From Macrostomum lignano (Eukaryota): 64,000 nucleotides of DNA. A program made the position numbers and the translations under genes. Numbering within the stretch: the stretch's first letter is position 1; each line of letters begins with the position of its first letter. Below the pieces are notes generated by a model. That model ran no database searches and was not told the DNA's origin. It was given only the letters and a program-made list of their open reading frames with translations. Location: NCBI GenBank assembly GCA_002269645.1, contig NIVC01001214.1, positions 28,733 to 92,732 on the forward strand, in the 5' to 3' direction. Positions 29,564-30,751 of the stretch are shown in pieces.

Positions 29564-30751
29564 ATGTCAAAGTTACCCACGTTTACAAAGAAGGCGGTAG
29601 CAAATGCGGCGGAGCCGCCAGCCAAGCGTCCAAACCACAGGCAGTCCACGGACATGCGCCAAGACAGCACAGCACTGGCCACGTCGCAATCAAGGCAGGC
29701 CCCAGGCCGCACGTCGGTGCCACCGGCGGAACGGCGGCGAGTCTCGCATGGTGCTTCGGCCAAAACCACGCCTCCGCTCGAACCAGGTGTCCTTGAGCCG
29801 GGCTCGGACAAGTCCTCGGCGGCGGCATCCACCATTCCAAAATCGCCTGTGCTAGCTATTACGGCCGAGAAGGCCAACTCTCCAAGTAGCGCCATCTCGA
29901 TATCGTCGGCGAGCTGCTCAGACTCTGCGACTGTGTTGGAGGGGGCCGGCCAAGCAGGCTCACAGGACCCCAGCGCAGCTGTAGCAGCACCCGAGTCTGA
30001 AACTGAAGCGGACTCTGCAGGCGATGCCAACGTCGATTTGGACGCTGAAGACAATAGTAGCCTGCCCTATGATAATCCGATCGGATTCCCTCTAGAAGCA
30101 GACAAGTCAGCGCTACAAATCAAACTGCCCTATCAAGATGTTCGGCTAGAATACTATCCTAACATGCTCCGAAGCATAGCCGACGACATCTACGAACGAC
30201 TAATTAAAGATCTGCTACCAATAGCTACAAGGCATCGTCCTCATGAACGGCGTCGGGTGGTCTGGTACGGTCCAGACTACTCTTACTCTGGAGTCCCACT
30301 CGGCGCCAATCTCAAATGGCATCCTCTGGTCGAGGACATGCGAGATTACTTGGAGTTCAACGCAGATATTAACGCTCCCAAATTCAACAGCTGCCTGATA
30401 AATTTCTATGAATCGGCAGATGACAACATACCCTACCATGCTGATGACGAACCCGAACTCGGCCAGGACCCGTACATCGCCACAGTCTCTTTTGGGGCTG
30501 TGCGCAAATTCCTGGTAAAGAGTAACGAGGAACAGCAGGTAGTGGCAAGTTTCGAGACCAAGCCCGGCTCTGTTATCATCATGAAGGGAGCCTGTCAACG
30601 TCGGTGTAAACACAGTGTCCCGGCTGTCGTGTCCAGGAGGCGTCCGTGTGTCGCTCACCTTCAGGGTAACCCACCCACCTGGCAACGGCAGTCGGGGGCA
30701 CGGAGGCACGACCGCGGCAGCTGCACCCAACGAGCAAGGGCCTGGCAGTAG
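29564..30751 (+). CDS. LINE ORF1 part 1: low-complexity N-terminus plus AlkB/ALKBH2-3-like 2OG-Fe(II) dioxygenase (frameshifted near 30630)
   Basis: RRVVWYG..YSYSG, FNSCLINFY, HADDEPELG (H 30437, D 30443), IATVSFGAVRKF, GSVIIMKG, KHSVP (H 30611). The closing RVSLTFR lies in the +1 frame. Confidence 0.9.
   Translation: MSKLPTFTKKAVANAAEPPAKRPNHRQSTDMRQDSTALATSQSRQAPGRTSVPPAERRRVSHGASAKTTPPLEPGVLEPGSDKSSAAASTIPKSPVLAITAEKANSPSSAISISSASCSDSATVLEGAGQAGSQDPSAAVAAPESETEADSAGDANVDLDAEDNSSLPYDNPIGFPLEADKSALQIKLPYQDVRLEYYPNMLRSIADDIYERLIKDLLPIATRHRPHERRRVVWYGPDYSYSGVPLGANLKWHPLVEDMRDYLEFNADINAPKFNSCLINFYESADDNIPYHADDEPELGQDPYIATVSFGAVRKFLVKSNEEQQVVASFETKPGSVIIMKGACQRRCKHSVPAVVSRRRPCVAHLQGNPPTWQRQSGARRHDRGSCTQRARAWQ

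What the first reader, a model, noticed from the sequence alone, without database searches (positions are those of the whole stretch)
30120..30670. AlkB-family dioxygenase carried in the LINE ORF1 region
Seen: a complete Fe/2OG ligand set, HxD (30437-30445), H (30611) and RxxxTFR (30645-30665), with ALKBH2/3-like WYG..YSYSG and FNSCLINFY. It lies inside the TSD-bounded element upstream of the gag knuckles. Known: AlkB enzymes reverse m1A/m3C alkylation in ssDNA and RNA, and some plant RNA viruses carry the domain in their replicase. Inference: the element may repair or demethylate its own RNA or cDNA, removing RT-blocking marks or countering methylation-based defence. How common AlkB is in LINEs needs a database check.
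Basis: partly seen in the sequence, partly recalled or inferred. Interest (0 to 1): 0.85.

Follow-up and report, generated by a model that had tools for sequence, protein, structure and literature searches.

The report
LINE Gag-like protein carrying AlkB demethylase
A jumping gene (LINE) sitting in a ribosomal-DNA spacer carries an ALKBH3-like nucleic-acid demethylase fused to its RNA-coating protein; the fusion is conserved across a whole, apparently undescribed, clade of LINEs, but this copy is frameshifted as assembled.

Summary
The AlkB domain is real: Pfam 2OG-FeII_Oxy_2 E=1e-20, human ALKBH3 E=1e-23, and an AlphaFold model (pLDDT 92) with TM 0.86 to ALKBH3. Every motif sits at the coordinates given.

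The element (28188-36009) has a 14-bp TSD and lies in the rDNA intergenic spacer 0.5 kb downstream of a U1 snRNA gene.

The fusion is not a one-off. Relatives carry AlkB, a flexible linker, an RRM-like region, three CCHC knuckles and a C-terminal helix in one uninterrupted ORF1, followed by an APE+RT ORF2. These come from Macrostomum lignano (flatworm) and several SRA assemblies.

- All catalytic residues are invariant.
- The LINE AlkBs form one clade, separate from the host ALKBH3-like gene.
- AlkB and ORF2 identities fall together, down to about 37% in ORF2.
- dN for AlkB equals dN for ORF2.

No paper describing AlkB in a non-LTR retrotransposon was found. The likely role, which is inferred, is removing RT-blocking m1A/m3C from the element's own RNA or cDNA. 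I rate it a new variant of a known kind.

The parts
28174..28187 (+). Left target-site duplication, AAAGACGGTCTCTT
   Evidence: Exact 14-bp repeat flanking the insert. The uninterrupted site is present in other rDNA units at 16787 and at 61029 (minus strand).
28188..36009 (+). Full-length non-LTR retrotransposon (7822 bp) in the rDNA intergenic spacer, 485 nt downstream of a U1 snRNA gene (27527-27689)
   Evidence: BLAST of the insert-bearing spacer against the empty spacers; Rfam map of the array; APE+RT ORF2.
28188..29563 (+). AT-rich 5' untranslated region (1376 nt) starting with a short 10-nt tandem repeat. No ORF and no similarity to relatives beyond a short ttagactagc motif near the 5' end.
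   Evidence: compared by eye with L006.
29564..30124 (+). ORF1 start (ATG) and a low-complexity N-terminal region of about 187 aa
   Evidence: no domain found. Relatives such as P0030 also have a low-complexity N-terminus.
30125..30677 (+). AlkB (ALKBH3-like Fe/2OG dioxygenase) domain. Residues up to the second His are in frame 2; the last strand, with RVSLTFR (30645-30665), is in frame 0.
   Evidence: Pfam E=1.1e-20; PDB phmmer ALKBH3 E=1e-23; AF2 pLDDT 91.9 and Foldseek TM 0.86 to ALKBH3-ssDNA complexes; motif coordinates.
30628..30645 (+). Frame break 1 (frame 2 -> 0). It is a net loss of 2 nt compared with all relatives, between the His and the RxxxxxR motif.
   Evidence: tblastn of the intact relative's ORF1; H-to-R spacing of 34 nt against 36 nt.
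30678..31000 (+). Gly/Ala/Pro/Ser-rich flexible linker (frame 0), homologous to the linker of P0001
31082..31100 (+). Frame break 2 (frame 0 -> 2), inside the conserved F(I/L)(R/K)WLxxNFxG motif of the RRM-like region
31002..31558 (+). RRM-like region(s) of the Gag-like part of ORF1
   Evidence: Homology to the corresponding region of the intact ORF1s. No Pfam hit, so the RRM assignment rests on architecture and motifs only.
31559..31720 (+). Three CCHC zinc knuckles: CRKCQRFGHTANRC, CNICAAAHRWQDC, CANCGEAHRANHRNC
   Evidence: Regex coordinates; weak Pfam zf-CCHC hit; conserved in relatives.
31990..32120 (+). Frame break 3 (frame 2 -> 0), within a low-complexity poly-Ala/Pro stretch. Its exact position cannot be resolved.
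   Evidence: In L001 the C-terminal helix is in the same ORF as the knuckles.
32124..32378 (+). ORF1 C-terminal helical segment (LVSGLLPLLVQALVEVLTTL...) and its stop codon (32376-32378)
   Evidence: tblastn to the L001 ORF1 C-terminus.
32368..35250 (+). ORF2, an uninterrupted open frame of 960 codons. APE endonuclease starts near 32428, RT spans about 33976-34740, FADD is at 34492. There is no RNase H, no C-terminal CCHC, and no ATG upstream of the APE domain.
   Evidence: Pfam RVT_1 E=1e-34 and Exo_endo_phos_2 E=2e-10; 58-61% identity to the ORF2 of L001 and of M. lignano L006.
35251..36009 (+). 3' UTR. It ends in a conserved stem-loop (CGGCAGAGCCC...GGGCTGATCCG, about 35947-35975) and a CGTTTAACAACAAC tail.
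   Evidence: Three of nine pairs are compensatory against M. lignano, from only 3 sequences.
36010..36023 (+). Right target-site duplication
5276..5694 (+). Second, independent 419-nt insertion at the identical spacer site with the identical 14-bp TSD (5262-5275 and 5695-5708). It shares only the roughly 65-nt 3' end (stem-loop plus CGTTTAACAACAAC) with the LINE. It is either a truncated copy of a related family or a non-autonomous partner.

Best explanation
The window holds one copy of an APE-type LINE inserted at a specific 14-bp site in the rDNA intergenic spacer. Its Gag-like ORF1 protein belongs to a clade in which an ALKBH2/3-type AlkB dioxygenase is permanently fused to the usual RNA-binding module. 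The fusion is N-terminal and joined through a long flexible linker to RRM-like regions, three CCHC knuckles and a C-terminal helix.

Shown here:
- The domain is a bona fide AlkB and is closest to ALKBH3.
- The fusion is one continuous ORF in intact relatives.
- The Fe(II) and 2OG residues are invariant.
- The LINE AlkBs are monophyletic, separate from the host ALKBH3-like gene, and have diverged in step with ORF2.

Inferred: ORF1p coats the element's own RNA in cis, as established for other LINE ORF1 proteins. The tethered enzyme would then oxidatively remove 1-methyladenine and 3-methylcytosine from the single-stranded template RNA, and possibly from first-strand cDNA or the exposed target strand. 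These lesions are hard stops for reverse transcriptases, so removing them would allow full-length copying of a 7-8 kb template. This mirrors the AlkB domains in plant RNA-virus replicases.

This particular copy, as assembled, has at least three frame breaks in ORF1 (one inside the AlkB domain) and no AUG for ORF2. It is therefore either recently inactivated or mis-assembled at those points.

The confidence of 0.6 is a blend: about 0.95 for identity and the family-level fusion, about 0.8 for catalytic activity in intact copies, and about 0.45 for the specific m1A/m3C template-cleaning role.
For: Domain identity: Pfam E=1e-20; ALKBH3 E=1e-23 against ALKBH2 E=2e-13, with E. coli AlkB not reaching 1e-3; AF2 pLDDT 91.9; Foldseek top nine hits are all human ALKBH3, TMq 0.81-0.86, then ALKBH2, with FTO only at rank 50.

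Family trait:
- L001 has a continuous ORF1 (AlkB, linker, RRM-like, 3x CCHC, helix) followed by ORF2.
- L003 is a full element: an 843-aa AlkB-ORF1 plus a 948-aa APE+RT ORF2.
- L008 has a 962-aa AlkB-ORF1 directly followed by an APE ORF.
- M. lignano L006 and L009 hold copies with AlkB-ORF1 and APE+RT ORF2.
- The exhaustive phmmer search gave about a dozen 50%-identity clusters of such proteins at the top.

Selection: R..W.GP..Y.Y, NS.L.N.Y, H.D.E.ELG, Q....H and R..LTFR are invariant across lineages that share only 34-63% AlkB identity. dN between the window and L001 is 0.37 for AlkB, 0.37 for ORF2 and 0.61 for the RRM-CCHC part.

Single old acquisition: an NJ tree places all the LINE AlkBs in one clade. 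That clade is apart from the ALKBH3 clade, which holds emu and crinoid ALKBH3 and the M. lignano host gene PAA75878.1. AlkB and ORF2 identities fall together, 55-63% / 56-61% within the near group and 34-44% / 37-40% to L003 and L008. The nearest outgroup LINE (L010, 28% ORF2 identity) has an ORF1 without AlkB.

Plausibility: an orchid Ty3/Gypsy element carries an active AlkB demethylase (PMC9289625), and a host ALKBH9B promotes mobilisation of an LTR retrotransposon (PMC10686560). From my own knowledge, not checked here: AlkB treatment is used in tRNA sequencing because m1A and m3C block reverse transcriptases, and plant flexivirus AlkB domains repair RNA (van den Born et al. 2008).
Against: - No biochemical or expression evidence exists; substrate and timing are inferred from fold similarity only.
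- In this copy the domain is split by a frameshift and ORF1 is broken at two further places, so this locus probably makes no functional protein unless these are assembly errors.
- All LINE-clade AlkBs match Pfam only from profile position about 30-48 onward, whereas cellular homologues match from position 2-5. The hairpin before the WYG motif is shortened, so substrate handling may differ from ALKBH3.
- dS is saturated, so no formal dN/dS could be obtained.
- The NJ tree has no support values.
Confidence: 0.6

Rival explanations
1. The domain is an epitranscriptomic eraser of regulatory marks, m6A or regulatory m1A. It would strip host-deposited methylation that would otherwise send the LINE RNA to decay or sequestration. 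That makes it counter-defence rather than damage repair, as proposed for the orchid Gypsy AlkB.
For: TE RNA is controlled through m6A in plants and mammals, and demethylases change mobilisation (PMC10686560, PMC7873242, PMC9289625). The tethering to ORF1p fits this role equally well.
Against: Sequence and structure place the domain with ALKBH3/ALKBH2, the m1A/m3C repair type. They do not place it with ALKBH5/FTO/ALKBH9-type m6A erasers: FTO is only rank 50 and ALKBH5 is not among the 50 PDB matches listed. The orchid domain is ALKBH5-like, a different subfamily (PMC9289625).
Confidence: 0.2
2. The AlkB module has lost catalysis and serves only as an extra nucleic-acid-binding or oligomerisation module of ORF1p.
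For: The N-terminal part of the canonical AlkB profile is not matched, and the pre-WYG hairpin is shortened in all LINE members.
Against: Every Fe(II) ligand and 2OG-binding residue (N..Y, HxD, H, RxxxxxR) is invariant across lineages with only about 35% identity. That pattern is not expected for a purely structural module.
Confidence: 0.07
3. At this locus the feature is just a dead pseudogene: a LINE copy whose ORF1, including AlkB, is decaying. It would have no present function in this genome.
For: There are at least three frame changes in ORF1 and no AUG for ORF2.
Against: The TSD is perfect, ORF2 is uninterrupted over 960 codons, and there are no in-frame stops within any ORF1 segment. 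All breaks are small deletions. The rRNA gene copies in the same window also differ by singleton homopolymer indels, so some or all breaks may be assembly errors. This rival concerns only this copy; it does not touch the family-level finding.
Confidence: 0.5
4. The AlkB-Gag fusion is an artefact, for example a host AlkB gene next to a LINE, or chimeric gene models.
For: The M. lignano database entries are automatic gene models of varying length.
Against: Continuous prokaryote-style ORFs (no splicing assumed) span AlkB through the knuckles in L001, L003 and L008. In the window the domain lies inside the TSD-bounded insert. Host ALKBH3 is a separate clade.
Confidence: 0.01

Closest known systems
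Human ALKBH3 (and ALKBH2), cellular 1-meA/3-meC oxidative demethylases
   Same: Best sequence match (E=1e-23) and best structural match (TM 0.86, 31-33% identity). They share the same HxD...H triad, N..Y and RxxxxxR motifs.
   Different: ALKBH3 is a free-standing host protein. Here the domain is the N-terminal module of a retrotransposon Gag-like protein. It forms its own clade apart from the ALKBH3 orthologues, including the flatworm host gene, and has a shortened segment before the WYG motif.
AlkB domains in replicase polyproteins of plant RNA viruses (flexi-, clostero- and ampeloviruses) and other RNA viruses
   Same: A selfish RNA-templated replicator carries its own AlkB, presumably to keep its template RNA free of methyl lesions. 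Foldseek finds them (E 1e-7 to 1e-10, TM 0.6-0.8).
   Different: Those domains are embedded in an RdRp polyprotein of an RNA virus. Here the domain is in the ORF1 (Gag-like) protein of a reverse-transcribing nuclear element. The similarity is lower than to ALKBH3 (19-26% identity).
Orchid (Phalaenopsis) Ty3/Gypsy elements with an AlkB ORF (PMC9289625)
   Same: A retrotransposon-encoded AlkB-family dioxygenase, shown active in vitro. This is the only retrotransposon precedent found in the literature searches.
   Different: That is an LTR element with a separate extra ORF. Its domain is ALKBH5-like (m6A eraser), a recent acquisition in one plant genus. The present case is a non-LTR element, a fusion to ORF1, ALKBH3-like, and an old clade-wide trait.
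Enzymatic accessory domains in LINE ORF1, for example the SGNH/GDSL esterase of CR1/L2-type ORF1 (own knowledge)
   Same: It shows the same principle of modular ORF1 evolution, in which an enzyme is fused to the RNA-binding module.
   Different: It is a different enzyme class with a different presumed substrate. One metagenomic retroelement ORF here combines AlkB and a weak GDSL-like match (P0178).
Target-specific LINEs of multicopy RNA genes (R1/R2 in rDNA; Tx1 families targeting U2/U5 snRNA and 5S; PMC4494074)
   Same: The window element and a 419-nt partner use the identical 14-bp rDNA-spacer site. The M. lignano relative sits in tandem arrays in two distinct U5 snRNA loci.
   Different: The clade of this element was not determined. 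Its ORF2 lacks the C-terminal Cys-His motif typical of L1/Tx1, and none of those families is reported to carry AlkB.

Membership tests
AlkB family (Pfam PF13532), ALKBH2/3 subgroup | Significant match to the family profile, above the curated cut-off | tested here: met
   75.2 bits against a 31.2-bit cut-off, E=1.1e-20.
AlkB family (Pfam PF13532), ALKBH2/3 subgroup | Fe(II) facial triad HxD...H in one reading frame | tested here: met
   HAD at 30437-30445 and His at 30611-30613, both in frame 2. Invariant in all relatives.
AlkB family (Pfam PF13532), ALKBH2/3 subgroup | C-terminal RxxxxxR (2OG/substrate) motif in frame with the triad, in this copy | tested here: not met
   RVSLTFR at 30645-30665 is in frame 0. 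The spacing from the His is 34 nt against 36 nt in all relatives. It is met in relatives P0001, L001, P0030, P0031, P0033, P0039 and P0042.
AlkB family (Pfam PF13532), ALKBH2/3 subgroup | 2OG-binding N..Y motif (NxxLxNxY) | tested here: met
   FNSCLINFY at 30383-30409; invariant columns N, L, N, Y.
AlkB family (Pfam PF13532), ALKBH2/3 subgroup | Double-stranded beta-helix fold closest to ALKBH3/ALKBH2 rather than ALKBH5/FTO | tested here: met
   AF2 pLDDT 91.9. Foldseek ranks 1-9 are ALKBH3 (TMq 0.81-0.86), ranks 10-24 are mostly ALKBH2, and FTO is rank 50.
AlkB family (Pfam PF13532), ALKBH2/3 subgroup | Orthology with host ALKBH3 | tested here: not met
   The LINE AlkBs form a separate clade from the ALKBH3 orthologues, including M. 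lignano PAA75878.1 (NJ tree without support values).
AlkB family (Pfam PF13532), ALKBH2/3 subgroup | Fe/2OG-dependent demethylation of m1A/m3C | not testable with these tools
   Needs a biochemical assay.
APE-type non-LTR retrotransposon (LINE) | ORF2 with an N-terminal APE endonuclease and a reverse transcriptase | tested here: met
   Exo_endo_phos_2 E=2.4e-10 and RVT_1 E=1.2e-34 in the open frame 32368-35247.
APE-type non-LTR retrotransposon (LINE) | Target-site duplication, no LTRs, defined 3' tail | tested here: met
   Perfect 14-bp TSD with empty sites in sister rDNA units; 3' end ...CGTTTAACAACAAC.
APE-type non-LTR retrotransposon (LINE) | Gag-like ORF1 with CCHC knuckles | tested here: met
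   Three CCHC motifs at 31559-31720, conserved in relatives.
APE-type non-LTR retrotransposon (LINE) | Intact coding capacity of this copy | tested here: not met
   At least three frame changes in ORF1 and no ATG before the APE domain. The rRNA copies show some indel noise, so real mutation against assembly error is unresolved.
Named LINE clade (Jockey/CR1/R1/Tx1 and others) | RT phylogeny with reference elements | not tested
   No reference LINE library was available. The architecture (RRM-like plus 3x CCHC ORF1; APE+RT without RNase H or C-terminal CCHC; 3' stem-loop plus short repeat tail) suggests the Jockey/CR1-like group, by my own knowledge only.
Site-specific LINE | Independent insertions at the same nucleotide position | tested here: met
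   The full-length element and a 419-nt element with the same 3' end occupy the same 14-bp site with identical TSDs in two rDNA units. The relative in M. lignano lies in two different U5 loci with the same junction.

The most novel reading that the evidence does not exclude
This is an undescribed, old clade of target-specific LINEs (rDNA spacer, U5 snRNA genes) in flatworms and other, unidentified hosts. Its Gag-like ORF1p carries a catalytically active ALKBH3-like demethylase that cleans m1A/m3C from its own template RNA or cDNA so that reverse transcription can run full length. It would be the first nucleic-acid repair or 'eraser' enzyme found in a non-LTR retrotransposon, and direct evidence that base methylation of template RNA limits retrotransposition in vivo.
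Probability: 0.35. Interest if true: 0.8.

Novelty: new variant of a known kind. Interest (0 to 1): 0.62.

Why it matters
If the tethered AlkB is active, it says that methyl lesions or marks on template RNA (m1A, m3C) are a real barrier to retrotransposition, strong enough for a LINE lineage to keep its own eraser over deep evolutionary time. That gives a natural, genetically tractable system for asking how RNA and ssDNA base methylation restrict reverse transcription; Macrostomum lignano is a laboratory flatworm.

It extends AlkB carriage from RNA viruses and one LTR-retrotransposon lineage to non-LTR elements, and adds a new enzyme to the known repertoire of LINE ORF1 modules.

There is a practical side effect. 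Copies of this element are annotated as 'Fe2OG dioxygenase domain-containing protein', which can inflate counts of host AlkB genes in comparative studies. An example is presence/absence analyses of ALKB2 with DNMTs in flatworms (PMC9246332). That such analyses are affected is my inference.

Tried and rejected
- **dN/dS, window against L001.** dS is saturated (NG86 not computable), so only dN could be compared between regions.
- **Profile search with full-length ORF1s (A4).** It returned only two M. lignano proteins, probably because low-complexity words filled the candidate list. The first word-indexed search was also shallow, with 5 hits. The exhaustive phmmer search was the productive one.
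- **Source organism.** It could not be identified; no eukaryotic nucleotide collection was available. All named relatives are M. lignano, but the best identities are only 52-71%, so the host is probably a related flatworm. This is unproven.
- **LINE clade.** It could not be assigned for lack of reference elements.
- **Frame breaks.** I considered that they are assembly artefacts. rRNA copies show singleton homopolymer indels at about 0.14 per kb, against roughly 1 break per kb in ORF1 and none in ORF2. This is inconclusive.
- **Recent capture of host ALKBH3.** Rejected by the tree and by co-divergence with ORF2.
- **Chimeric gene models.** Rejected by the continuous ORFs in L001, L003 and L008.
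- **3' tail pattern search** and **MAFFT of the 3' ends**. Both were uninformative. The three-sequence RNAalifold was more useful.
- **Literature.** Seven searches found no AlkB-carrying non-LTR element.
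Full report
**What the window is**

Rfam shows a eukaryotic rDNA array. It has 18S, 5.8S and 28S units of about 11 kb with a U1 snRNA gene in every intergenic spacer. The units are on the + strand up to about 50.7 kb and inverted after that.

I compared the spacer of the third unit with the other units. This defines a 7822-bp insertion at 28188-36009, flanked by a perfect 14-bp duplication, AAAGACGGTCTCTT (28174-28187 and 36010-36023). The uninterrupted site is present at 16787 and at 61029 on the minus strand. 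The insertion lies 485 nt downstream of the U1 gene at 27527-27689.

**Checking the observation**

- VVWYGPDYSYSG at 30257-30292
- FNSCLINFY at 30383-30409
- HAD at 30437-30445
- His at 30611-30613
- RVSLTFR at 30645-30665

The ORF 29564-30751 matches Pfam 2OG-FeII_Oxy_2 at E=1.1e-20. A phmmer search of PDB sequences gives human ALKBH3 at E=1e-23 and ALKBH2 at about 2e-13, while E. coli AlkB does not reach 1e-3. An AlphaFold2 model of the in-frame part (171 aa) has mean pLDDT 91.9. Its nine best Foldseek matches in the PDB are all human ALKBH3 (TMq 0.81-0.86, 31-33% identity). ALKBH2 follows, and FTO appears only at rank 50. Viral AlkBs match less well.

There is one important correction. HxD and the second His are in frame 2 (coordinate mod 3), but RVSLTFR is in frame 0. 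The His and Arg codons are 34 nt apart, whereas every relative has His+12 residues, which is 36 nt. The Pfam match accordingly ends at profile position 175 of 194.

**Anatomy of the element**

A tblastn with the intact ORF1 of a relative shows that the window's ORF1 is split into four pieces:
- Frame 2 (29564 to about 30628): low-complexity N-terminus plus AlkB up to the His.
- Frame 0 (about 30639-31100): the last AlkB strand, a Gly/Ala/Pro-rich linker, and the start of the RRM-like region.
- Frame 2 (about 31082-32035): RRM-like region, three CCHC knuckles at 31559-31720, and poly-Ala.
- Frame 0 (about 32124-32375, stop at 32376): C-terminal helix.

ORF2 is an uninterrupted open frame of 960 codons (32368-35247). 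It has APE (from about 32428) and RT (about 33976-34740). It lacks an ATG upstream of the APE domain, whereas the relative starts MNNDQNN....

The 3' UTR ends in a stem-loop and CGTTTAACAACAAC.

The frame breaks may be real or may be assembly errors, and I could not decide which. The rRNA gene copies in the window differ by a few singleton homopolymer indels, about 0.14 per kb. ORF1 has roughly one break per kb, ORF2 has none, and there are no in-frame stops.

**Is AlkB a property of the family?**

Yes. The evidence comes from several independent sources:
- **Closest database protein.** P0001 (UniParc UPI0007A33015, 69-71% identity) reads CEHSVPAVGTQDGIRISLTFR in frame and continues into the same Gly-rich linker.
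- **L001.** The ORF2 search found two SRA-assembly relatives at 58% and 55% identity. The contig of the first, L001, has one continuous ORF1: the AlkB C-terminal half, an Ala-rich linker, the RRM-like region, three CCHC knuckles and the C-terminal helix. ORF2 follows 48 nt downstream.
- **Exhaustive phmmer search.** Against 1.8 billion representatives, the top of the list is about a dozen clusters of long proteins with an N-terminal AlkB plus the RRM-like and CCHC parts. Those with names are all Macrostomum lignano, for example PAA54533.1, PAA49615.1 and A0A1I8JCX4, and are annotated only as 'Fe2OG dioxygenase domain-containing protein'.
- **L003.** This is a complete element with an 843-aa AlkB-ORF1 and a 948-aa APE+RT ORF2.
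- **L008.** It has a 962-aa AlkB-ORF1 abutting an APE ORF.
- **M. lignano contigs L006 and L009.** They carry copies with AlkB-ORF1 and a 926-aa APE+RT ORF2 that is 61% identical to the window's.

**Selection and origin**

Across these lineages the AlkB domains share only 34-63% identity. The following motifs are nevertheless invariant: R..W.GP..Y.Y, NS.L.N.Y, H.D.E.ELG..P.I..S.G..R, GS..M, Q....H and R..LTFR.

Between the window and L001, dN is 0.37 for AlkB and 0.37 for ORF2, against 0.61 for the RRM-CCHC part. dS is saturated.

A neighbour-joining tree of 148 AlkB domains puts all the LINE-borne domains in one clade. That clade is separate from the one containing human, emu and crinoid ALKBH3 and the M. 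lignano host gene PAA75878.1. The tree has no support values.

AlkB identity and ORF2 identity fall together across element pairs. The nearest outgroup LINE (28% ORF2 identity) has an ORF1 without AlkB. The simplest reading is a single old acquisition followed by vertical inheritance with the element under purifying selection.

One peculiarity stands out. All LINE members match the Pfam profile only from about position 30-48, whereas cellular homologues match from position 2-5. The segment before the WYG motif is shortened.

**Mechanism (inferred)**

ORF1 proteins of LINEs bind the element's RNA in cis; this is established for other LINEs and was not tested here. A demethylase held on that protein by a linker of about 100-150 residues would be concentrated on the template RNA and on the single-stranded intermediates of target-primed reverse transcription.

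The ALKBH3-like fold points to m1A and m3C in single-stranded nucleic acid. By my own knowledge these lesions stop reverse transcriptases, so removing them should raise the yield of full-length copies.

I rate an m6A-eraser or counter-defence role lower, because the domain is far from ALKBH5 and FTO. A non-catalytic role is unlikely given the invariant active site.

**Comparison with what is known**

Nine literature searches were run; seven of them looked for an AlkB-carrying non-LTR element, one failed on a term error, and one checked U5 snRNA targeting.
- The only retrotransposon precedent found is an ALKBH5-like extra ORF in orchid Ty3/Gypsy elements (PMC9289625).
- There is a host-demethylase effect on the Onsen element (PMC10686560).
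- No paper describes AlkB in a non-LTR retrotransposon.

The sequences themselves are public but are not recognised as LINE ORF1. I therefore rate this a new variant of a known kind, not categorically new.

**Side findings**

- **Same spacer site used again.** The same 14-bp site is occupied in unit 1 by a 419-nt insert (5276-5694) with an identical TSD. It shares only the LINE's 3' stem-loop and tail.
- **Orientation switch at the target site.** The + to - switch of the array falls at that same site, at 50722|50723.
- **U5 targeting in M. lignano.** The related family forms tandem arrays in two different U5 snRNA loci, with the junction ...TTTTAACAACAA|AGATTTCCG inside U5. The clade therefore looks target-specific. 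U5-targeting Tx1 families are already known (PMC4494074).
- **AlkB in other retroelement ORFs.** It also occurs in ORFs of at least one other retroelement type (L005, with a GIY-YIG domain upstream, a weak GDSL-like match, and an RT ORF downstream) and possibly in L007.

**Verdict**

This copy is broken as assembled, while intact relatives exist.

Noticed in passing
window 5262-5708: A 419-nt insertion (5276-5694) at exactly the same spacer site as the LINE, with the identical 14-bp TSD. Only its last roughly 65 nt (stem-loop plus CGTTTAACAACAAC) resemble the LINE 3' end, at 78%; the rest is unrelated. It is either a truncated copy of a sister family or a SINE-like partner mobilised by the LINE.
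   Followed up: partly
window 50700-51300: The switch from + oriented to inverted rDNA units occurs at 50722|50723, within the LINE target site (...AAAGACGGTCTCT|aggtttc...). It is joined to an inverted piece of spacer. Either the rearrangement started at the endonuclease site or this is an assembly join.
   Followed up: partly
L006 7666-14290 and L009 1123-12134 (Macrostomum lignano NIVC01002892.1, NIVC01003829.1): The related AlkB-LINE forms head-to-tail tandem arrays (period about 6452 bp) starting at a complete U5 snRNA gene in two loci with different upstream flanks. The 3' junction ...TTTTAACAACAA|AGATTTCCGTGG lies inside U5, and each further copy is preceded by the 3' 65 nt of U5 plus about 43 nt. 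This suggests U5-gene-specific insertion, perhaps with co-transcription.
   Followed up: partly
window 4593-4755, 16140-16302, 27527-27689, 50052-50214, 61519-61681: Every rDNA intergenic spacer carries a full U1 snRNA gene (Rfam 151.7 bits each), so rDNA and U1 are linked in this genome.
   Followed up: no
window 10769-13172 and 41114-43200: Rearranged rDNA pieces. One 28S is truncated at model position about 2120 of 3401. A 28S 5' fragment (model 24-664) is followed by an 18S that is only 1345 nt long. These may be real variant units or mis-assembly.
   Followed up: no
window 51100-51230: A telomere-like (CCCTAA)n / CTAACCCTAA tract inside the intergenic spacer.
   Followed up: no
L005 (JGI 3300055003 Ga0535643_0013829) 3-7148; also L007, and P0241 / P0146 of M. 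lignano: AlkB also sits in an 883-aa ORF with a weak GDSL-lipase-like C-terminal match. That ORF is followed by an RT ORF and preceded by a GIY-YIG domain, an arrangement like a Penelope-like element. A 1012-aa AlkB ORF in L007 is followed by a DUF8422/HTH_animal gene. AlkB may therefore have been recruited by more than one retroelement type.
   Followed up: partly
window 35947-36009; window 5632-5694; L006 14112-14171: A conserved 3'-terminal stem-loop, CGGC..AG(CCC/TTC)-loop-(GGG/GAA)CT..GCCG, upstream of the CGTTT(T)AACAACAA tail. Three of nine pairs change on both sides in M. lignano. It is probably the RT recognition element, but only three sequences are available.
   Followed up: partly
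window 32368-32460: ORF2 has no ATG between the preceding stop and the APE domain, whereas the relative L001 starts with ATG 7 codons before the conserved (I/V)xHLNCRG. ORF1's stop (32376) overlaps the ORF2 open frame by 11 nt. Either the start codon has been lost or initiation is unconventional.
   Followed up: no
window 30215-30260 and relatives: All LINE-clade AlkBs lack a match to the first roughly 30-45 positions of the Pfam profile. They have a short His/Gln/Arg-rich loop where cellular AlkBs have the W.Q...G hairpin before WYG. This may mean an altered nucleotide-recognition lid.
   Followed up: no
L003 4346-4717: A 123-aa ORF with no Pfam match lies between the AlkB-ORF1 and ORF2 and overlaps the ORF2 start by 8 nt. 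The same ORF is present in L004.
   Followed up: no
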